From Pristiophorus japonicus (taxonomy: Eukaryota): a stretch of 64,000 nt of DNA. The position numbers were made by a program, and so were the translations under genes. This document shows, one piece after another, positions 9,105 to 62,359 of this stretch; position 1 is the first letter of the stretch, and each line of letters opens with the position of its first letter. Location: the NCBI RefSeq assembly GCF_044704955.1, contig NC_091999.1:10788001-10852000 (forward strand), written 5' to 3'. The notes below the pieces were generated by a model. The model saw nothing but the letters and a program-made list of their open reading frames with translations. It made no database searches and was not told the origin of the DNA.

Positions 9105-9718
9105 CACTGGTTGAGCTGCTACTGATGTCTATTGCAATTGCTAAATTGTGGAATGTGTTCCCTCTGCTGGTGTGAATGCTCCTGATGGCCATTGTATAAT
9201 AGGTAATTAGTAAAATATGTTCCCTGTGCTTGTGTGTATGCTCCTGATGGTCGTTGTAATAGGCAATAAGTAAAATGAGTTCCTTCTGGTGTGAATGCTC
9301 CTGATGGCCATTGTACAATGGATAGTTATTAAAATGTGTTCCTCATGCTGGTCTGTGTGCTGCTGATAGTCATTTAATAGCTAATTAGTAAAATGTGTTC
9401 CCTATGCTGGTGTGTATGCTCCTTATGGTCATTGTAATAGGTAATCAGTAAAATGTGTTCCCTTCAAGTGTGAATGCTCCTGATGGTCATTGTAATAGGT
9501 AATGAGTAAAATGTATTCCCTCTGCTGGTGTGAATGCACATGACATCCATTGTAATAGTCAATTAGTGAAATGTGTTCCCTCTGCTGGTGTGAATGCTCC
9601 TGATGGCCATTGGAAAATAGGAAATTAGTAAATGTGTTCCGTATGCTGGTGTGTATGCTGCTGATGTCCATTGCAATAGGTATGTTGTGCTACATATTCC
9701 CTATGCTGGTGTGAATTT
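9105..9718. repeat. About 60-bp minisatellite (9 full units) in the presumed leader intron of V4
   Basis: Unit approximately CTGGTGTGAATGCTCCTGATGGTCATTGTAATAGGTAATTAGTAAAATGTGTTCCCTATG. Confidence 0.95.
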
Positions 9719-9766
9719 TCCTAATTAAGAACGGGACTAACTAATGATTTAAATACTTTTACGCAG

Positions 9767-10068
9767 GTAATATCCAATGCAGTTCGGTAATGCAGCCTCA
9801 ATATGAGCTGAAGGTATATGAAGGAGATAAGTCTCATTGAACTGCAATTACAACACCAGTTCGGACGATCCGAATCGTTACTGGTACGAGCTGTACTCGA
9901 ACTAGGTTTTGCAGTTTATTTTGTACCGTGATAACACCAGGGGAAGGATTGCATGTTTTGTGAAAGGAAAATTCGATGCTCATCATTTCAATCGATATCA
10001 AGTTTTCCTTTGTCAATTTCTGCAGCAGAGACTGAAGACAAACTGGTCTATTTCTGCGGACTCAGGAT
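9767..10068 (+). pseudogene. TCR V pseudogene (V4), related to V5
   Basis: SVMQPQYELKVYEGD..CNYNTSSDDPNRYWY..(TAG)..QFILYRDN..FPLSISAAETEDKLVYFCGLR, with frameshifts. Degenerate RSS CACGGGG-22-GCAAAAATC at 10069-10106. Possible decayed leader near 8955-9006. Confidence 0.88.
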
Positions 10069-17263: not shown

Positions 17264-17277
17264 GCGCCCTCTGGTGA
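17264..17277 (-). promoter_or_regulatory. Candidate CTCF site 24 bp downstream of the V6 nonamer
   Basis: TCACCAGAGGGCGC versus the core consensus CCACCAGRGGGCGC. Confidence 0.65.
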
Positions 17278-17301: not shown

Positions 17302-17341
17302 GGTTCTTGTACGGGCTCTGCCATAGATCTGCACCAGTGTG
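17302..17341 (-). promoter_or_regulatory. RSS of V6 (24-bp spacer)
   Basis: CACACTG-24 bp-ACAAGAACC. Confidence 0.85.
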
Positions 17342-19840: not shown

Positions 19841-20169
19841 CACACTGCTACAGAGTTATTGTGGATCCCTTACAAAAACCCACGCTGAGAGTTCCAGTTG
19901 CTGCGAACCAGAGGGCGCTCTCATACCGATAATCAGAAGCAATAATTCAGCATGCTCTGTCAGTATCACAGGGAGATTCTTTAAAGGCGACAAAACTAAA
20001 CCAACGACGAGTCTGCCCTTCTGCTTCTGTCTTCCTGACAGCGTCGGAGTGACACAATCTCCATGATTTAGGTCTTAAAATACATGTTCCATCGGGGAAA
20101 GAACAAACCATCGAGTGTTTGCAATTCAGAACCTAAAAATGTTGCAAATTAGAGAAAAGAGGAAACGTG

Positions 20170-38579: not shown

Positions 38580-39315
38580 CACTGGTTGAGCTGCTACTGA
38601 TGTCTGTTGCAATTGCTAAATTGTGGAATGTGTTCCCTCTGCTGGTGTGAATGCTCCTGATGCCCACTGTATAATAGGTAATCAGTAAAATATGTTTCCT
38701 ATGCTTGTGTGTATGCTCCTGATGGTCGTTGTAATAGGCAATAAGTAAAATGAGTTCCTTCTGGTGTGAATGCTCCTGATGGTTATTGTAATAGGTAATG
38801 AGTAAAGTCTGTTCCCCATGCTGGTGTGAATGCTCCTGATGGCCATTGTACAATGGATACTTATTAAAATGTGTTCTCATGCTGGTGTTTATGCTCCTGA
38901 TGGTCATTGTAATCGGTAATTAGTAAAATGAGTTCCATATGCTGGTGTGTTTGCTGCTGATGGTCATTGTAATAGGTAATTAGTAAAATGTGTTCCCTAT
39001 GAAGGTGTGTATGCTGCTGATGGTCATTGTAATAGGTAATTAGTAAAATGTGTTCCCTATGCTGGTGTGTATACTGTTGATGTTCATTGTAATAGGTAAT
39101 TAGTAAAATATGTTCCCTTCAAGTGTGAATGCTCCTGATGGTCATTGTAATAGGTAATGAGTAAAATGTGTTCCTTATGCTGGTGTGAATGCTCATGATG
39201 GCCATTGGAAAATAGGAAATTCGTAAAATGTGTTCCCTATGCTGATGTGTATGCTGCTGATGTCCATTGCAATAGATATGTTGTGCTACATATTCCCTAT
39301 GCTGGTGTGAATTTT
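38580..39315. repeat. About 60-bp minisatellite (11 full units)
   Basis: Same unit as 9105-9718. Confidence 0.95.
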
Positions 39316-39362
39316 CCTAATTAAGAACGGGACTAACTAATGATTTAAATACTTTTACGCAG

Positions 39363-53400: not shown

Positions 53401-56400
53401 AAACCTTGATCTCGTTAGCCATAAGCACCTTTGAATATATCTAACGAATTGGCCTCAGCAACTTTCTGTGGTAGAGTATTGCACAGGTTCACAATTCTCT
53501 GAGTGAAGAAGTTTCTCCTCATCTCGGTCCTAATTGGCTTACCCCTTATCTTTCGACTGAGACGCCTGTCTCTTGACTTCACCAACTTCGGGAACATTCT
53601 TCCTGCATCTAACCTGTCCAATCCCGTCAGAAAGTTATATGTTTCCATTAGATCCCCTCTCTTTCTTCTAAATTCCAGTGAATATAAGCCTAGACGATCC
53701 AGTCATTCTTCACATGTCAGTCCTGCCATCCTGGGAATCAGTCTGGTGAACCTTCGCTGCACTCCCTCAATAGCAAGAATGTCCTTCCTCAGATTAGGAG
53801 ATCAAAACTGCACACCATATTCAAGGTGTTGCCTCACCAAGGCCCTGTACAACTGCAGTAAGGCCTCCCTGCTCCTATACTCAAATCCTGTCGCTATGAA
53901 GGCCATATTGCCATTTGCCTTCTTCACCGCCTGCTGTACCTGCATGCCAACTTTCAATGTCCGAGGTACCATGACGCCCAGGTCTCGTTGCACCTCCCCT
54001 TTTCCGAATCTGTCACCATTCAGATAATAATCTGCCTTCCTGTTTTGGCCACCAAAGTGTATAACCTCACGTTGATCTACATTACACTACATCTGCCATG
54101 CATTTGCTCACTCATCTAACCTGTTCATTTTAGCCTGCAGCCTCTTAGCATCCTCCTCACAACTCATACTACCACCCAGCTTAGTGTCATCTGCAAACTT
54201 GGAGACATTACATTCAATTCTTTCATCTAATTCATTAATGTATATTGTAAATAGCTGGGCTCCCAGCACTGAACGTTGCGGTTCCCCACTAGTCCTTGCC
54301 TGCCATTCTGAAAAGGACCTGTTTTTTCCTACTCTTTGCTTCCAGTTCTCTATCCACATCAATACATTACCCCCAATACCATGTGCTTTAATTTTGCACA
54401 TTAGTCTCTTGTGTGGGACCTTGTCAAAAGCCTTTTGAAAGTCCAAATACAGCACATCCATTGGTTCTCCCTTGTCCACTCTACTAGTTACATGCGCAAA
54501 ATATTCTGGAAGATTTGTCAAGCATTATTTCGCCTTTATAATTTCATGCTAACTTGGACCGATCTTGTCACTGCTTTCCAAAAGCGCTGCTATTTCATCT
54601 TTAATAATTGATTCCAACATTTTCCCTACTACAGATGTCAGGCTAACCGGTCTATAATTCGTTGTTTTCACTCTCCCTCCTTTTTTTTAAAAAGTGGGGT
54701 TACATTAGCTACCCTCCAATCCATGGGAAATGATCCAGAATCTACAGAATGTTGGAAAATGACGACCAATGCAACCACTATTTCTAGGGCCACTTCCTGA
54801 AGTACTCTGTGATGCAGACTATCGAGCGCTGGGGATTTACCGGCCTTCAATCCCATCAATTTCCCTAAAACATTTCCCGGACTAATAAGGAGTTCCTTCC
54901 ATTCCTCCTTCTCGCTAGACCCTCGGTCCCCGAATATTTCCAGAAGGTTGTTTGTGTCTTCCTTAGCGAATCAAATCAGTTTGTGTGGTGAGGGTACTGT
55001 TAGGGAGGGAATTCAAGTGTTTTGACCCAGTGATGGTGAAGTAACGGCGATATACTTCCAGGTCCGCTTTATGTGTAACTTGGAGTAGAATTTGGCGACT
55101 GCCATTGACATTCTAGGCTGTAAAGTCACGGGTTTGGAATGTGCTGCGGAAGAAGCCTTGGCGAGTTGCTGAATTGCACCTTGTACATGGTGTACAGTGC
55201 AGCCATGGTGCACCGGTTGTGGAGGAACTGAATGTATAAGGTGGCGGATGGGCTGCCAATCAGGCGTGCTGCTTTCTCTTGGATGGTGTCGAACTTATTG
55301 AATGTTGTTGGAGCTGCACTCATTCAGGAATGTGGGGAGTATTCCATCACATTTCTAATTTGCGCATTGTAGATGGTGGAAGTACTTTGGGGAGTCATAA
55401 GTGGTGCAGTCCCCACAAAATACCCCACCTCTAACCTGCACTTGTTGTGACCGTTATTTATGTGGTTGGTCCAATTAGGTTTCCACTCAATGGTGATCCT
55501 CAGGTCGTTCATTCGATTCTGGTTATATCCTCGCTTGTTCCAGATAGTGATTTACAGGCACGTATGTGGAGCAAATAATGCTTTTCACTTATCAGCCCAA
55601 GCCTGAATGTCATCCAGGTCTTGCTGCAATTGGGCATGGACTGGTGCATTTTCTGAGGAGTTGCGAAGGCACTGAACATTGTGTAGTCATTAGCAAACAT
55701 CCACACTGCACAATTCTGAACTTATCATGGAGGGAAGATCTTCGATGTAGTCGCTGAAGAAGGTTGGGCCGAGGACAATACCCTGGGCAACTCTTGCACC
55801 GATGGCCTAGTGCTGTGATGATTGTTGTCCAACCACCATAACCATTTTTTTTTGGCTGGAAATGTCTCCAGCCAGAGGAGAGCACCCCGCGATTTCCACT
55901 GATTTTCATTTGCTTGGGCTCCTTAATGTCACACTAAGTCAAATGCTGTCTTCATGTAAGTAGCTTTCATTCTCACCTCATCTCTTGAATTCAGCTCTTT
56001 TGTCGATATTTCGACCAAGGCTGTAATGATGTCTGGAGCCGAGTGGACCAAACTGGGCATCGGTGAGCAGGTTATTGGCGAGTAATTGCCATTTCATACA
56101 CTGTTAACGATAACTTCCATCATTTTGACGATGATTGAGAATAGACTGCTGGGCTGTTAATTGGCCGGATTAGAATTGTCCTGCTTTATGTGGACAGGAC
56201 ATACCTCTGCAGTTTTCCAGATTGTTGTAGCTGTATCAGAAGTGCTTGACTAGAGGCGCAGCTAGTTCTGGAGCACAAGTCGTCAGGACGACAAATAGGA
56301 TGTTGTCGGGACCTATAACCATTGCAGTATCCAGGGAGCTCAGACTTTTCTTGGGCTCACGTGGAGTGAATCGAATTGGGTGAAGACAGGCTTCTGTGAT

Positions 56401-58135
56401 GGTGGTGACCTCAGGCCGATATGGATCATCCATTTGACACTTTTCGCTGAAGATTGTTGCAAACGCTGCAGCCTTGCCTTTGCACTGACGTGCTGGCTCT
56501 GCCATCATTGCAGATGGGGATGTCCATGGAGCCACCATCTCCCCTTAGATGTTTAATGCACCACCACCATTCACGACGGAAAGCAGCAGGACAGCAGAGA
56601 TTTGATCTGATCCTTTGTTTGTGAGTTCGCTCAGCCTTGTCGATGGCATGCTGCTTCCACGTGTTAGCGTGCATATAGTCTGTGTTGCAGCTTCCCCATG
56701 GAGGTACCTCATTTTTACATATACCTGGTGCTGTTTCTGGCATGCTCTTTACATTCAACTCTGAACCAGGGTTGGTCCCATGACTTAATGGTATTGGTAG
56801 ATTGAGCGATATGCCGGGCCATTAGGTTACAGTTTGTGATGGAATACAATTCTGCTGCTGCGTCATGGATGCTCAGTTTTGAGCTGCTTGACCTGTTCTA
56901 AATCAATCCCATCTAGCCCGTTGGTGGTGCCAAACAACACGATAGAGGATGTCCTTAGTGTGAAGATGGGACCTCGTCACCACAATGACTTTGCAGTGAC
57001 CACTGCTGTCAATGCTGTCATGGACAGATGCATCTGCGAGAGCTGGTTTGTTGCAGACGAGTTCAAGTCGTTATTTTTCCTCTTGTTGTTTCACTCACCA
57101 CCTCCCGCAGGCCCAGTCTGGTAGCTATGTCATCAAGACCAGGCCAGCTCAGCCAGTATTGGTGCTACCGAGCCAAACTTGGTGTTGGACATTGAAGTCT
57201 CCCACCCAGAGTACATCTGATCAAGAAAATTCTCCTGAACGCACGATGAAATTCTTCCCCCTGACTGCCGTTCATACTATTACTATCCCAGACTATATTA
57301 GTACAGTTCAAGGCCTCCGTTATCAATACTCTATACTTCTTTTACTTCTCTGTAATTTAACAGCGAATGCCCCCGTCTTCCTCCTTCCCGCTATTTGGCG
57401 GCCTACAGAAAACACCCAGTAGTGCAATTGCAGCTCTATTATTTCTTATATCTAACGATAGAGAGTCTGTGCGTGATCTATCCGGTACATAGCCACCCTC
57501 CAACACTGCAACATTCTCCTGAACTAATACTGCCAACAATACTCCTTTCTTTCCTTCACATTCCTGAACACCTATATTGAGGACTAATTAATAGCCAAAT
57601 CCGTCCCTTTTGTCAGTCACTATCGCCAAAATTTCATATTCACATGTGGCTCTTTCCACCTGCTGCTCACCAACCTGATTAACCAAGCATTGTGCGTTTA
57701 TCTATGTGAGATATCCTTGTATTGTCTCTTCGTGTGACCACCATCTACTAAATTAATATTTCTTGCTCTAGTGCTATCTGCATTCTGACATCTAATGGTA
57801 TATTCTGGCGTCAACCTTCTGCCAAATTGGTTTAATGCCTCCCAACATAACTCGCAACCCCCACCCCCTAGCTGGGGAATATTTGTCCCAGAAGTTGAGA
57901 TGTAACCCTTCCTGCCTTTACTGGTCCCACTTTAACTGGAGCGGGTCCCAATGTACCACGAATCTAAAGCCGTCCCTCTTGCACCATCTCTCCAGCCAGG
58001 CATTGCTCTGCTCCATCCGACTTTTGCTATATTCAAAAGCTCGGGGCACCGAGAGTAATCTGGAGATTATTAGCTTTGTGGTGATGCTTTTTAATCTCGT
58101 TCTGAGATCCCGAAAATATGCAGGAACTCATCCCT
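50490..58135 (-). mobile_element. Nested LINE cluster: old CR1 pieces (50490-53170 and 57219-58135) containing a second CR1-clade family (53180-57215), itself containing a younger CR1 (53268-54968)
   Basis: The endonuclease region breaks at about 53170 and resumes at 57219. The middle element has a WMFANDYTMF-type RT. The inner element has YLDFQKAFDKVPH/KFADDTKLG and a CATAGAAA tail. Confidence 0.8.
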
Positions 58136-58140
58136 GATTA

Positions 58141-58928
58141 CGTTTTTCAACAGCTGTCTCCGTGCTCTGCTTCATTGTGCCTGTGATACCCACCACGTCC
58201 AGGTTTGTGAAGTCTCTTTATGCATTCTATCACTGTGTGTCTGTAATCCCCACTATGTTTAGGCTTTTGAACTCTCTCGGTGCTCTGTATCACTGTGTGT
58301 TGGTAATCCCCAACATGTTCCGGTTTTAGTAGGACTCTCCCTGCTCTCTCCTTCCCCATTTTCTCCCCCTCCCCTGGTTCTCCACGTTCCCGCCCCAGCT
58401 CTCCCCCTCCCTTTGCTTCCTCCCTGCCCGTGCTCTCCCGTTCCACTTTCTCCCACTGCTCTCTCCCTCTCATTGCTCTCCCCGTCCTTCCTTTCCTCTC
58501 CATGCTCTTAACAGATAAGGGAATAAGGGTTTAGGGGAACCGGGCAAGGAAGTGGACCTGAGTCCATGATCGGATCAGCCATGATCGTATTAAATGGCTG
58601 AGCAGACTCGAGGGGTCATATGGCCTATGCCTGCTCCAATTACTTATGTTCTCATGTTCCCTCCATGGACTATATCATTGCGTATCTGTAATCGCCATCA
58701 TGATCAAGTTTTAGTGTGGCTCTCTCCCTGCTCTGTACCACTGTGTGTCTGTAATCCCCACTATGTCCAGGTTTTTGAACTCTGCGTGCTCTTTGTCACT
58801 GTGTGCCTGTAATCCCCAACATGTTCAGATTTAATACCGCTCTTTTCATGTTCTGTATGACTGCGTATCTGCAATCCCGACCATGATCAGGATTTTGTAC
58901 GGCTCTCTCCGTGCTGTGTAGCACTGTG
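58141..58928 (-). repeat. Tandem array of about 60-bp units, each containing a heptamer-spacer-nonamer (RSS-derived); interrupted by a pyrimidine tract and a CR1 3' fragment (about 58340-58660)
   Basis: Perfect CACAGTG (minus) at 58231-58237, 58291-58297, 58739-58745, 58797-58803 and 58922-58928, each with a nonamer-like motif 18-23 bp away. Confidence 0.88.
58890..58928 (-). promoter_or_regulatory. 23-RSS of V11
   Basis: CACAGTG-23 bp-ACAAAATCC. Confidence 0.93.
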
Positions 58929-59234
58929 CTGTGCGCCGACTCGGTGCACAGTAATACACAGCGGAGTCACTCAGTTGCAGTTTTGCAATGTTTAACCGGC
59001 TGATTTTCTCGGCAGGATCGATCGTAGCAGAAATTCGGCCACCGGCAGTGTTTTCTTCATTCCCCTCTCCTGAAGTGTGTCTCTGAAGCAGGTATTTTGG
59101 AGGCTGCCCTGGGGACTGACAGTACCAGTGTACGGTGTACTGACAGGCACCTGAATATTCACAGCTTAAAGTAATGGTGTCACCGACAGTAGAGGTTTGT
59201 AGAAGCGGACTCTGGGACACCGTGGAACTGGAAG
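58929..59234 (-). CDS. Open TCR delta-type V exon (V11) with extra CDR1 cysteine and no intact leader; candidate NAR-TCR supporting Vdelta
   Basis: SSSTVSQSPLLQTSTVGDTITLSCEYSGACQYTVHWYCQSPGQPPKYLLQRHTSG...RI...DSAVYYCAPSRR; CCTCCAG acceptor, phase 1. Confidence 0.85.
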
Positions 59235-59698
59235 CTGGAGGGCAAAAATGGGAGAATGTTATTTATTTGGCTGCTATTTACCCGGGGACTGTGGTCAATC
59301 ACAGAAAAATTCTGCCTCTCACGGTAATGCTATTTTCATTTGAAGCCTGCTGCAAATTTATTCACTCTCAATGTGGAAAGAATAAGAGGGGGAGTTCAGA
59401 ACATTTTTTAAGCAGCAAGTTTTTATGAACTAGAATGCACTGCCTGAAAAGGTGCTGAAACCATATTCAATTGTTACTTTCAAACTGGAATTGGATCACT
59501 ACTGCAAAAGAAAACATTTGAAGCGCTATGGGGAATGAACAAAGGGCTGGGACCAAGTGGCAGCACCTTCACGAGCCGGCAGAAGAAATGACCTCCTTCT
59601 GTGCTGCATGATGTTATGATTGCTAGTAACTTTATCTTTCTATTTTTCTTGGTGCAAGATAAACCCGAGGTAACATTGTAATTCTCCTCCTCACTTAC

Positions 59699-59757
59699 AA
59701 TGATGATTGACCCATAGGAGCACTGCTGCGTTATTCCACTGAGCACAGCAAATCCAT
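59699..59757 (-). pseudogene. Frameshifted leader-exon relic of V11
   Basis: ATG GAT TTG CTG TGC TCA GTG GAA TAA; the shifted frame reads AAVLLWVNHH into a GTAAGT donor. Length 59 nt is not 3n+1. Confidence 0.55.
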
Positions 59758-62359
59758 CAAGAAGCAGTGTGGTTCATCAGCACCGATTGAGCCAAACTGA
59801 AATTTTGTGGGTCAAAGCCCAAGCGTTCAATGTAACCTTACTCTTACCGGGAGCTCCTGCCTGCCTTTAACTCTGTTTCACTTTTCTTCCGTAAATTGGG
59901 CAAATATTACGCCATTTAAATTTAAGTTGAATTATTTCCAGTTAGTTTCATTTTATTTCCACATCTGGGTCGCTCACTTTGTGCTGTTTGTGGTTTTCTT
60001 CCCAGCCTGTGAACTTGTCCTAAAGTGACTCAGTTATCGGTTGGTTTCAGTCTGTGCAGCTTCTGCAGTGGTTTTACTGTTATTCACTGGAAACTGGCTC
60101 TTCAAACACTCTGACAATTGCTGTTCCTGACGCCCATTGGATGAGTCAATCCGACTTGCTCCGGGTGGAGTTTTCTCTGAGTTTTACATTGTACAGAATC
60201 TGCAGAAAAGGAACAGTCCATTCGACTCAACGAGTCGGTTTTGGTGTTTATACTCCACACGAGGCTCCTCCCACTCTAATTCCCCCTTCCCACTGTGAAA
60301 CCCATGTTCATCCATTCCGTTCTTATCATGTGTTTTCCAAGACGCGCCTTAATTGCATCAAAGCTCTCTGCTCCAACTTGTCCATGTAGAAACATAGGAA
60401 CATAGAAATTTACAGTGTAGAAGTAGGCCATTTCGGTCCATCGTGTCTGCACAGGCCGACAAAGAGCCGCATGGACCTTGGTCAGCAGCCCTAAAGGTTA
60501 TGTATAAACCAATGAACAATGACGTAGAGGGAAAGAACACCCAGCCAAACCAATCAGCCTCACACAACTGCCACACCCCTTATACTGTACCATTCTACAC
60601 TCCACCCCAACCGGAGCCATGTGATCTCCTGGGCGAGGCAAAAACCAGAGAAATTCCCAGGGAGAAAAAATGTGCAAAAACTTTCTCTCGGGGACATCCA
60701 GGCGATCGAAACTAGTCCAGGAGATCATGCTCGCGGTATTCTTTTCACTGCAGTACTTACCATAATATCTGCGTCGTCCAACAAAAGGTCATCCAGTCTA
60801 ATCCCAATTACCAGCTCTAGTTCCGTAACCCTGCAGGTTATGGCACTTGAAGTGTCCATCCAACCATCTCTTAAAGGTTGTGAGTGTTTTTGCATCCACC
60901 ACTCTTCCAGGCAACGAGTTCCAGATCCCCACACCCATCTGTGTAAAGAAGCATCCCCTCGAATCCTCTCTAAATCTTCCACCATCCCCCTTAAATCTAT
61001 GCATCTCGTTATAGAAAACTCCCTCAATGGAATTAGGCCCTTACTATCTACTATGTCTAGGCCCCTCAATATTTTCTACACCTCAATAAGGTCTCATCTC
61101 AACCTCCTCTGTTCCAATGAGAACTAATCCAGCCTATCCAATCTGTCCTCATATCGAAGATTCTCGGTTCCAGACAGCATCCCAGTAAATCTCTTCACCC
61201 TCTCTACTGCAATCCGTCCTTCCTATAATACGGCAAATAGAACAGCACACATTACTCCAGCAATGGCCGAACCAGAGTATTTTACAATTTAAGCATAACC
61301 TCACTGCTCTTATATTCTATGCCTCGGCCAATAAAGGCAAGCATTCCATATGTCTTCTTAACGATCTTATCCGCCTGGCCTGCTGCATTCACGGATCTGT
61401 GGACAAGCACTGCAAGGTCCCTTTGTTCATCTACCTAATAAGTGACCTATCGCCTAATGTGTATACACTTTCCTTGTTACCCCTCCGAAACTTCGTCAAC
61501 TCACATGTCTCTGAATTAAATTGCATTTGCCACTACTCTTCTCACCTGACCAGTAGATTGATATCCTCCTGTAGCCCATGACTTTCCTCCTCATTATCAG
61601 CACACAGCCAATTTTAGTGTAGTCTGCAAATTTCTTAATCATACTCCCTATGTTCAAATCTAATTCGTTGATATTCACCAAAAAGCTAGGGAACCAGTAC
61701 TGAGCCCTGCGAAACCCCACTGGAAACATCCTTCCAGTCACAAAGACATCCATCAATCATTACCCTTTGCTTCCTACCTCCAAGCCAGTTTTGGATCCAA
61801 CTTGCTACATTGCCCTGTATCCCATGGGCGTTAACCTTCATGGCAAGTCTGCCATGTGGGAGCTTATCAAAAGCCTTTCCACAGTCCATATGTACTAGAT
61901 TGAAGGCACTAGCATCGTCGATCCTCTTGATAACCTTCTCAGAAAATTCAATCAGGTTAGTCAAACACGATCTTCCCTTAACAACTCCGTGCTGACTCTC
62001 CCTAAATAATCCAAATGAAGATTCATCCTGTTTTTCAGATTTTTTACAATAGTTTTCCCACCACTGAGGTTAGGCTGACAGGCCTGTAATGAATCGACCT
62101 GTCCCTTTTTTCCTTCTTGAACAGGGGTACTACATCAGCAATCCTCCAATCCTTCGGCACTATGCCCAGATCCAAAGATGAGTGGAAAAAATGGTCAAGG
62201 CCTCTGCGATTTCCTCCTTTACTTTGCTCAACAGCCTGGGATGCATTTCATCTGGTCCTCTGGAATTATCTAATTTCAAAACTGTTAAACCACTTAATAA
62301 TTCCTCTCTCACTATATTTATTTCATCCAGAATATCACACGCCTCCTTGATCTCAGTAT

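What the first reader, a model, noticed from the sequence alone, without database searches (positions are those of the whole stretch)
58141..58928. Tandem array of recombination signal sequences downstream of a Vdelta: an RSS-derived minisatellite
Seen: the RSS of V11 plus about 24 bp of flank has been amplified into roughly 8 head-to-tail units, all in the same orientation as the V RSS. Minus-strand readings: real RSS CACAGTG-23-ACAAAATCC (58890-58928); CGCAGTC-23-ATTAAATCT (58827-58865); CACAGTG-18-TCAAAAACC (58770-58803); CACAGTG-23-ACTAAAACT (58707-58745); one unit split by a CR1 fragment; CACAGTG-20-TCAAAAGCC (58262-58297); CACAGTG-20-TCACAAACC (58202-58237); CACAATG-23-TGAAAAACG (58141-58179). 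Four extra heptamers are perfect although spacers have drifted. Known: RAG needs CAC and a spacer of about 12 or 23 bp, and V-less RSSs such as deltaRec act as deleting elements in the mammalian TCR alpha/delta locus. Inference: the two extra CAC-bearing 23-spacer copies could be decoy or deleting RSSs met before the V RSS, or the array could concentrate RAG at this V. Cutting at an extra RSS would leave the V and its own RSS available for a later rearrangement.
Basis: partly seen in the sequence, partly recalled or inferred. Interest (0 to 1): 0.85.

Follow-up and report, generated by a model that had tools for sequence, protein, structure and literature searches.

The report
RSS-derived minisatellite behind a shark V gene
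The recombination signal behind one T-cell-receptor V gene has been copied head to tail about eight times into a decayed minisatellite; one extra copy still looks usable by the RAG recombinase, but nothing here shows that the array has a selected function.

Summary
On the minus strand, eight units of 58-63 bp run from the V gene's own RSS (58890-58928) down to about 58120. A profile built without the real RSS unit still finds it (E 7.5e-13) and finds no other V RSS in the window. The unit is locus-specific, not a genome-wide repeat. Contigs 85-90% alike, read as paralogues or alleles, cover both the V and the array, and some skip a unit.

The array looks like a drifting minisatellite. Two units have lost CAC, three have 18-20 bp spacers, and one is split by a high-copy repeat plus a GA-rich expansion. 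Nonamers are no better conserved than other columns. The heptamer is nominally the best-conserved 7-mer, but the perfect heptamers trace to only two or three unit lineages.

By a published sequence filter, U4 (58707-58745) is a strong 23-RSS. It is the closest copy of the real one. U8 (58141-58179) passes only at the limit. The decoy or deleting role is neither tested nor favoured. Orthologues, joints and RNA could not be obtained. I found no description of an RSS-derived minisatellite in the library searched.

The parts
58929..59220 (-). V exon of a leaderless V with a CDR1 cysteine, a candidate NAR-TCR supporting V-delta. The second Cys codon ends at 58948.
   Evidence: Open frame. Pfam V-set E 1e-15. 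70% identical to P0001, which shares the CDR1 Cys. Leaderless plus CDR1 Cys is the published mark of NAR-TcR-associated TcR-delta V genes (PMC1845163).
58866..58928 (-). U1: the V gene's own 23-RSS, CACAGTG-23-ACAAAATCC (58890-58928), plus a 24-nt linker.
   Evidence: 15 of 16 consensus matches. Hit by the U2-U8 profile at E 7.5e-13. Related contigs carry ACAAAAACC here (58892).
58804..58865 (-). U2: CGCAGTC-23-ATTAAATCT. CAC is lost.
58746..58803 (-). U3: CACAGTG-18-TCAAAAACC. Perfect heptamer, wrong spacer.
   Evidence: 88% identical to U6.
58683..58745 (-). U4: CACAGTG-23-ACTAAAACT (58707-58745). The only strong extra 23-RSS.
   Evidence: 14 of 16 consensus matches, equal to or better than three genuine V RSSs of the window. 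Two mismatches under the filter of PMC11153149. 81% identical to U1. An 82-nt repeat at 79% identity and spacing 183 (D2).
58658..58682 (-). U5a: CGCAATG plus the start of a spacer, cut by the insertion.
58505..58660 (-). Fragment of a very high-copy interspersed repeat inserted in the U5 spacer. It is flanked by CATGGAGGGAA and CATGGAGAGGAA, a likely target-site duplication.
   Evidence: Sequence. Summed depth about 2.7 million against 30-100 in the array. Family not determined.
58335..58504 (-). GA-rich secondary expansion of the purine-rich spacer core (GGAGAGAGC-like short repeats).
   Evidence: D3, D5. Lenient TRF periods 28-72.
58298..58346 (-). U5b: 3' half of a unit, with nonamer ACTAAAACC and linker.
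58238..58297 (-). U6: CACAGTG-20-TCAAAAGCC. Alternative register CACACAG-22.
58180..58237 (-). U7: CACAGTG-20-TCACAAACC. Alternative register CACACAG-22.
58120..58179 (-). U8: CACAATG-23-TGAAAAACG (58141-58179). A borderline 23-RSS, and the most diverged unit.
   Evidence: 12 of 16 matches, the level at which background sites appear. Related contigs carry CACAGTG and TGAAAAACC here (58175, 58141).

Best explanation
This is a locus-specific minisatellite seeded by tandem duplication of about 63 bp: the 39-bp 23-RSS of a leaderless V gene plus about 24 bp of its downstream flank. It then grew by unit duplications, probably including a three-unit 183-bp step. It has since decayed by point changes, spacer deletions, one interspersed-repeat insertion and a GA-rich expansion. 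It is older than the duplication that gave this V its relatives, since related contigs also carry it. The array as a whole is most likely neutral. A by-product is one sequence-competent extra 23-RSS (U4, 183 bp beyond the real one), one marginal one (U8), and several same-orientation CAC heptamers. RAG should use these at low frequency. A joint made at U4 would carry V, the real RSS and 183 bp with a stop codon, so it would be non-productive but would leave the V's own RSS in place. Shown here: the structure, the homology to the real RSS, the low copy number, the presence in related contigs, and the RSS grading by sequence. Inferred: the neutrality and any RAG use.
For: Eight in-register units. 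The real RSS unit belongs to the family, by a leave-one-out profile at E 7.5e-13 and by a masked-motif hit to U4 at E 2.5e-4. There is no other copy in the 64 kb. Array depth of 28-100 equals that of the V exon and unique flank, whereas repeat pieces reach 9e4 to 2.7e6. Contigs 85-90% alike span 57812-58433 and 58135-58371, and 6-10 contigs share differences at 58846, 58872 and 58892. Joints skip 60, 83 and 167 nt. Signs of decay: CAC lost in U2 and U5, spacers of 18, 20 and 20, the repeat insertion with its target-site duplication, and the GA expansion. Nonamer conservation is average, p about 0.55. U4 is the unit closest to U1 (81%), with an 82-nt repeat at spacing 183, so recency is enough to explain its quality. 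Another unrelated 60-bp minisatellite with a 178-bp higher-order period sits in the same window, so such arrays arise readily here. The reading frame from the V runs into a stop at 58846-58848.
Against: The heptamer is the most conserved 7-column window: pairwise identity 0.84, rank 1 of 57, next independent window 0.76. Random sets of 7 other columns reach it in 0.4-0.8% of draws. Four of seven extra heptamers are perfect. This could reflect constraint on CAC heptamers. However, the perfect ones fall in only two or three unit lineages, the alignment is anchored on the heptamer, and the spacer holds a CpG and the gaps. The array has also survived the duplication of the V, which neutrality allows but does not predict.
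Confidence: 0.72

Rival explanations
1. One reading: the extra RSSs are functional decoy, deleting or second-chance signals. RAG meets U8 and U4 before the real RSS, and cutting there makes a non-productive joint that keeps V and its RSS for a later attempt, or the array concentrates RAG at this V.
For: U4 has a perfect heptamer, a 23-bp spacer and 7 of 9 nonamer matches. It passes the strong-RSS filter of PMC11153149, and U8 passes at the limit of 4 mismatches. All units share the orientation of the V RSS. The heptamer is nominally over-conserved. The array is retained in related contigs, where U8 is closer to consensus (CACAGTG, TGAAAAACC). RAG scanning can use cryptic signals as simple as a convergent CAC (PMC11153149).
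Against: Five of seven extra units are disabled. Nonamer and spacer length are not conserved. There is a repeat insertion and a GA expansion inside the array. U4's quality is explained by recent descent from U1. In this copy both the real nonamer and the U8 heptamer have moved away from consensus. No joints, RNA or orthologues could be examined.
Confidence: 0.12
2. The array is kept for a non-RAG reason, for instance as a row of protein-binding sites in the well-conserved linker core (GGGGATTACAG) that affects chromatin or accessibility of this V. This would be analogous to CTCF sites behind mammalian VH RSSs.
For: The linker core is the second-best conserved block, identity 0.76 at columns 49-55. 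Two other V RSSs of this window have a CTCF-core-like 14-mer 24-25 bp beyond the nonamer, which is the length of the linker here.
Against: The linker resembles no flank of the other V RSSs. No binding factor is identified. Conservation of the linker is no more than expected for the unit.
Confidence: 0.07
3. Assembly artefact: the array, or its unit number, is a mis-assembly of related V loci.
For: Several contigs 85-90% alike and several unit-skipping joints exist in the runs. No single listed contig spans the whole stretch.
Against: A 212-nt contig matches 58753-58964 exactly, across V end, U1, U2 and U3 (record 5). Units differ enough (49-88%) to be placed uniquely. The runs are probably from the assembled individual, so this is not independent support.
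Confidence: 0.03

Closest known systems
Cryptic RSSs, including those inside tandem repeats (mouse gamma-satellite cRS, Cowell et al. 2003, PMC2193808)
   Same: RSS-like heptamer-spacer-nonamer sites with no gene segment of their own, carried on tandemly repeated DNA. They are graded by sequence and are possibly cut by RAG at low level.
   Different: Here the repeat unit descends from a genuine V RSS and lies directly behind it inside an antigen-receptor locus. It is low-copy and locus-specific, not a genome-wide satellite. RIC scores were not computed.
V-less deleting elements: deltaRec in the mammalian TCR alpha/delta locus and KDE/RS in Ig kappa (from general knowledge)
   Same: Isolated 23-type RSSs without a coding segment that can recombine with a 12-RSS partner.
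   Different: Those elements are single, conserved and placed so that their use removes a constant region or a whole sub-locus. Here the extra RSSs lie 60-790 bp from a V RSS. They would therefore delete the same DNA as an ordinary rearrangement of that V and merely give a non-productive joint. No use or conservation is shown.
Ordinary vertebrate minisatellites
   Same: Head-to-tail units of about 60 bp, higher-order duplications, variation in unit number between related copies, a purine-rich core prone to slippage, and decay by substitutions and insertions.
   Different: The unit happens to be a recombination signal, so the copies are potential substrates of a site-specific nuclease in lymphocytes.
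CTCF-binding elements just downstream of VH RSSs in mouse Igh (from general knowledge; loop-extrusion papers listed)
   Same: A conserved element placed a fixed short distance behind a V RSS. Two other V genes of this window show a CTCF-core-like 14-mer 24-25 bp beyond the nonamer.
   Different: The array units contain no CTCF-core-like motif.

Membership tests
Functional 23-RSS (RAG substrate) | Heptamer begins with CAC | tested here: met
   Met by U1, U3, U4, U6, U7 and U8. Not met by U2 (CGC) or U5 (CGC).
Functional 23-RSS (RAG substrate) | Spacer of 23 bp, plus or minus 1 | tested here: inconclusive
   Met by U1, U2, U4 and U8 (23). Not met by U3 (18), U6 (20) or U7 (20). U6 and U7 reach 22 only with the weaker heptamer CACACAG.
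Functional 23-RSS (RAG substrate) | At most 4 mismatches to CACAGTG / ACAAAAACC with CAC intact (operational filter of PMC11153149) | tested here: met
   U1 has 1 mismatch, U4 has 2 and U8 has 4. All other units fail on CAC or spacer. About 3-4 sites of U8's grade are expected by chance per window (my estimate), and far fewer than one of U4's grade.
Functional 23-RSS (RAG substrate) | Cleavage or joining by RAG (joints in lymphocyte DNA, or substrate assay) | not testable with these tools
   Only assembled contigs of DNA runs were available, and no run on record as RNA holds the stretch.
Minisatellite | Head-to-tail units of 10-100 bp at one locus | tested here: met
   8 units of 58-63 bp. No copy elsewhere in the 64 kb. 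Depth equals that of single or low-copy flank.
Minisatellite | Unit-number variation between alleles or related copies | tested here: inconclusive
   Joints skip 60, 83 and 167 nt, and one links 58309 to 58764, each seen in single contigs. Allele and paralogue cannot be told apart, and all DNA runs come from one sample.
Deleting element of the deltaRec / KDE type | RSS without its own coding segment | tested here: met
   Units U2-U8 have only a 24-nt linker upstream of the heptamer.
Deleting element of the deltaRec / KDE type | Position such that its use removes a constant region or sub-locus that V rearrangement would not remove | tested here: not met
   The extra RSSs lie 63-790 bp behind the V RSS in the same orientation, so they delete essentially the same interval as the V itself. 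No 12-RSS partner is in the window.
Deleting element of the deltaRec / KDE type | Conservation across species and documented use | not testable with these tools
   No orthologous DNA could be fetched.
NAR-TCR supporting V-delta (the gene that owns the RSS) | V-set exon, no leader, cysteine in CDR1 | tested here: met
   Pfam V-set E 1e-15. The motif SGACQYTVHWY carries a Cys. A polypyrimidine-AG lies directly upstream in place of a leader. The criteria come from PMC1845163. Linkage to a NAR V-D-J cluster rests on an unchecked scan note.

The most novel reading that the evidence does not exclude
The array is a working part of NAR-TCR assembly. A row of same-orientation heptamers, with U4 as a competent 23-RSS, would engage RAG as chromatin is scanned towards this supporting V. 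That would either give a recoverable first cut that leaves V and its RSS for a second attempt, or tune how often this V is used. A related possibility is that the array was seeded by RAG activity in the shark germline. The evidence here does not exclude either reading.
Probability: 0.1. Interest if true: 0.75.

Novelty: new variant of a known kind. Interest (0 to 1): 0.4.

Why it matters
A naturally occurring row of graded RSS copies sits directly behind a real one. The copies include a perfect heptamer with spacers of 18, 20 or 23, heptamers that have lost CAC, and drifted nonamers. This is a ready-made test bed for how RAG chooses among neighbouring signals and for whether scanning RAG is trapped by cryptic signals before it reaches a V. 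It sits at a gene that must be rearranged together with a second V(D)J unit (NAR-TCR), where rearrangement efficiency may matter. If the array is neutral, as the evidence favours, it is a curiosity: it shows that RSSs can seed minisatellites and that annotation pipelines may call spurious RSSs there.

Tried and rejected
- **Default TRF** missed the array. Only lenient parameters find it.
- **Rfam** gave nothing in 56000-61000.
- **Genome-wide repeat or transposon tail:** rejected, because array depth equals that of the unique flank and the window holds no other copy.
- **Signal-joint reinsertion:** rejected, because there are no head-to-head heptamers and all units are direct.
- **Homology to the other 60-bp minisatellite** at 9107-9725: none.
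- **Orthologues and paralogues:** A two-unit DNA pattern found nothing in metagenome contigs, and neither did a V-protein scan.
- **RNA evidence:** no run on record as RNA holds the stretch.
- **A possible ninth unit or original flank at 58101-58125** (72% to the U1 linker, D4): left open, because that stretch is already inside a high-copy repeat (depth about 985 at 58112). I therefore make no claim that the array boundary coincides with the RAG cleavage site.
- **Literature:** searches for tandem or duplicated RSSs and RSS minisatellites found no precedent. The original NAR-TcR paper and a 2021 review were not held.
- **RIC scoring:** the model was not available. I used consensus matching and the filter of PMC11153149 instead.

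Full report
**What is there**

On the minus strand a V-set exon (Pfam V-set E 1e-15; open frame) ends with YYCAPS. It is followed by CACAGTG-23-ACAAAATCC at 58928-58890. The V has a cysteine in CDR1 and a polypyrimidine-AG in place of a leader. These are the published marks of NAR-TcR-associated TcR-delta V genes (PMC1845163). An unchecked scan note places a NAR V-D-J cluster about 2 kb beyond the window's end, upstream of this V.

The RSS plus the next 24 nt then recurs head to tail:

| Unit | Coordinates | Reading (minus strand) |
|---|---|---|
| U2 | 58865-58804 | CGCAGTC-23-ATTAAATCT |
| U3 | 58803-58746 | CACAGTG-18-TCAAAAACC |
| U4 | 58745-58683 | CACAGTG-23-ACTAAAACT |
| U5 | from 58682 | CGCAATG, interrupted, resuming with ACTAAAACC and a linker at 58346-58298 |
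| U6 | 58297-58238 | CACAGTG-20-TCAAAAGCC |
| U7 | 58237-58180 | CACAGTG-20-TCACAAACC |
| U8 | 58179-58120 | CACAATG-23-TGAAAAACG |

**Is it more than chance, and is it really derived from the RSS?**

- The repeat finder gives seven in-register 63-nt copies with spacings of 58-63 nt.
- The eight units align with 76% mean column identity.
- The linker-plus-heptamer 21-mer occurs four times against 0.00 expected.
- A profile built from U2-U8 alone hits the real RSS unit across all its positions at E 7.5e-13. No other V RSS of the window scores better than E about 1. The resemblance is therefore homology, not generic RSS likeness.
- With heptamer and nonamer masked, U1 still finds U4 at E 2.5e-4.
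- Default TRF misses the array. Lenient parameters find period 60-63.

**Copy number and relatives**

I laid contigs of four runs of the same species on 57600-59400 at 80% likeness. All the DNA runs come from one sample, probably the individual that was assembled.

- Summed depth is 28-100 over the array, the same as over the V exon (45-112) and the unique flank.
- The piece inside U5 (58515-58636) reaches about 2.7 million, and a piece at 57966-58026 reaches about 9e4.
- So the unit is not an interspersed or satellite repeat, and the interruption of U5 is a very high-copy element.
- The insertion is flanked by CATGGAGGGAA and CATGGAGAGGAA, a likely target-site duplication.
- It is followed by about 170 bp of GA-rich short repeats that resemble the purine-rich spacer core.
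- Several contigs only 85-90% alike cover the array (records 3 and 4: 57812-58433 and 58135-58371).
- Six to ten contigs share the same differences from the window at 58846, 58872 and 58892.
- Single contigs skip 60, 83 or 167 nt, or join 58309 to 58764.
- I read these as paralogues or alleles that also carry the array, with varying unit number. The array would then predate the duplication of this V.
- In those relatives the real nonamer is ACAAAAACC, and U8 reads CACAGTG ... TGAAAAACC. The window's copy has therefore moved away from consensus at three RSS positions.

**History**

- U1 is closest to U4 (81%) and U3 to U6 (88%).
- U2 and U5 share the CGCA start.
- U3, U6 and U7 share a spacer deletion.
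- An 82-nt repeat of 79% identity links U1-U2 to U4-U5 at a spacing of 183 nt (D2).
- The simplest history is a short array of already diverged units that was duplicated three units at a time. Further single-unit changes, the repeat insertion and the GA expansion followed.
- An unrelated 60-bp minisatellite with a 178-bp higher-order period is present twice in the same window, at 9107-9725 and 38582-39321. Arrays of this geometry evidently arise readily here.

**Are RSS positions protected?**

- Pairwise identity is 0.84-0.88 for the heptamer, 0.63 for the spacer, 0.67 for the nonamer and 0.67 for the linker.
- The heptamer is the best of 57 seven-column windows. The next independent one, the GGGATTA core of the linker, has 0.76.
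- Random sets of seven other columns reach the heptamer's value in 0.4-0.8% of draws.
- The nonamer ranks 27 of 55, p about 0.55.
- Spacer length is not kept: 18, 20 and 20.
- There are caveats. The alignment is anchored on the heptamer. Gaps and a CpG fall in the spacer. The perfect heptamers belong to only two or three unit lineages (U1/U4 and U3/U6/U7), while the other two lineages (U2/U5 and U8) have changed theirs.
- I take this as a weak hint of heptamer constraint at most, and as evidence against selection for complete RSSs.

**RSS competence by sequence**

I counted matches to CACAGTG and ACAAAAACC, requiring CAC and a spacer of 22-24.

- U1 scores 15 of 16.
- U4 scores 14 of 16. This equals or beats genuine V RSSs of the window at 17341 (14), 273 (13) and 28427 (13).
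- U8 scores 12 of 16. Thirteen sites of the window score exactly that, five of them inside the array, so this is the grade at which background appears.

A published operational filter for strong, bona fide-like RSSs requires CAC plus at most four mismatches with a 12- or 23-bp spacer (PMC11153149). U1 (1 mismatch), U4 (2) and U8 (4) pass it, and the other units fail. The same paper states that scanning RAG makes very low-level joins to cryptic signals as simple as a convergent CAC.

It is therefore reasonable to predict some RAG use of U4, and trace use of the other CAC-bearing units. The V frame runs into a stop at 58846-58848, so a joint at U4 would be non-productive while retaining the V and its RSS. 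This follows from the sequence. Whether it happens, and whether it matters, is untested.

**Other readings**

Two other V RSSs of the window do have one 24-25 bp beyond the nonamer (17264-17277 and 19905-19918).
- There are no head-to-head heptamers that would indicate reinserted signal joints.
- An exact 212-nt contig across the V end, U1, U2 and U3 argues against mis-assembly, though it is probably from the same individual.

**What could not be done**

- The protein search found only one 70% relative, whose product stops before the RSS.
- Two metagenome scans found nothing.
- No run on record as RNA holds the stretch.
- The RIC model was not available.
- Searches of the held literature for tandem or duplicated RSSs or RSS minisatellites found no precedent. 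The nearest is cryptic signals inside mouse gamma-satellite repeats (PMC2193808).

**Verdict**

The array is best read as a decaying, locus-specific minisatellite that incidentally supplies one good and one marginal extra 23-RSS. A selected decoy or deleting role remains possible (about 0.1) but is not favoured.

Noticed in passing
window 9107-9725 and 38582-39321 (+): Two paralogous 60-bp minisatellites (about 10-12 units, 178-bp three-unit higher-order period) lie just upstream of a V exon (splice acceptor near 9767). Each unit carries CCAGCAGAGGGAAC on the minus strand, a CTCF-core-like 14-mer with 1-2 mismatches. They are unrelated in sequence to the RSS array.
   Followed up: partly
window 17264-17277 (-) and 19905-19918 (+): CTCF-core-like 14-mers (TCACCAGAGGGCGC and GAACCAGAGGGCGC) lie 24-25 bp beyond the nonamers of the V RSSs at 17341 and 19841. 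This matches two unchecked scan notes about other parts of this genome.
   Followed up: partly
window 5461 vs 34950, 9107 vs 38582, 14483 vs 46164: A segmental duplication with an offset of about 29.5-31.7 kb carries V genes and their RSSs. The two RSSs differ by one spacer base, 22 against 23.
   Followed up: no
window 58892, 58175, 58141: In related contigs the real nonamer is ACAAAAACC, the U8 heptamer is CACAGTG and the U8 nonamer is TGAAAAACC. This copy has private changes away from the RSS consensus, and the V has WYCQ in place of the usual WYRQ. It may be a less-used or decaying member of its family.
   Followed up: partly
window 58335-58504 (-): A stretch of about 170 bp is G/A-rich on the V's coding strand (GGGAGAGAGCAG-like repeats). 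It was generated from the RSS spacer core and is in principle prone to unusual DNA structures.
   Followed up: no
window 57905-58130 (-): A second high-copy repeat (summed depth up to about 9e4) abuts the last unit. It reads through a protein-like stretch...NAWLERWCKRDGFRFVVHW..., probably a retroelement ORF fragment. It hides the distal boundary of the array.
   Followed up: no
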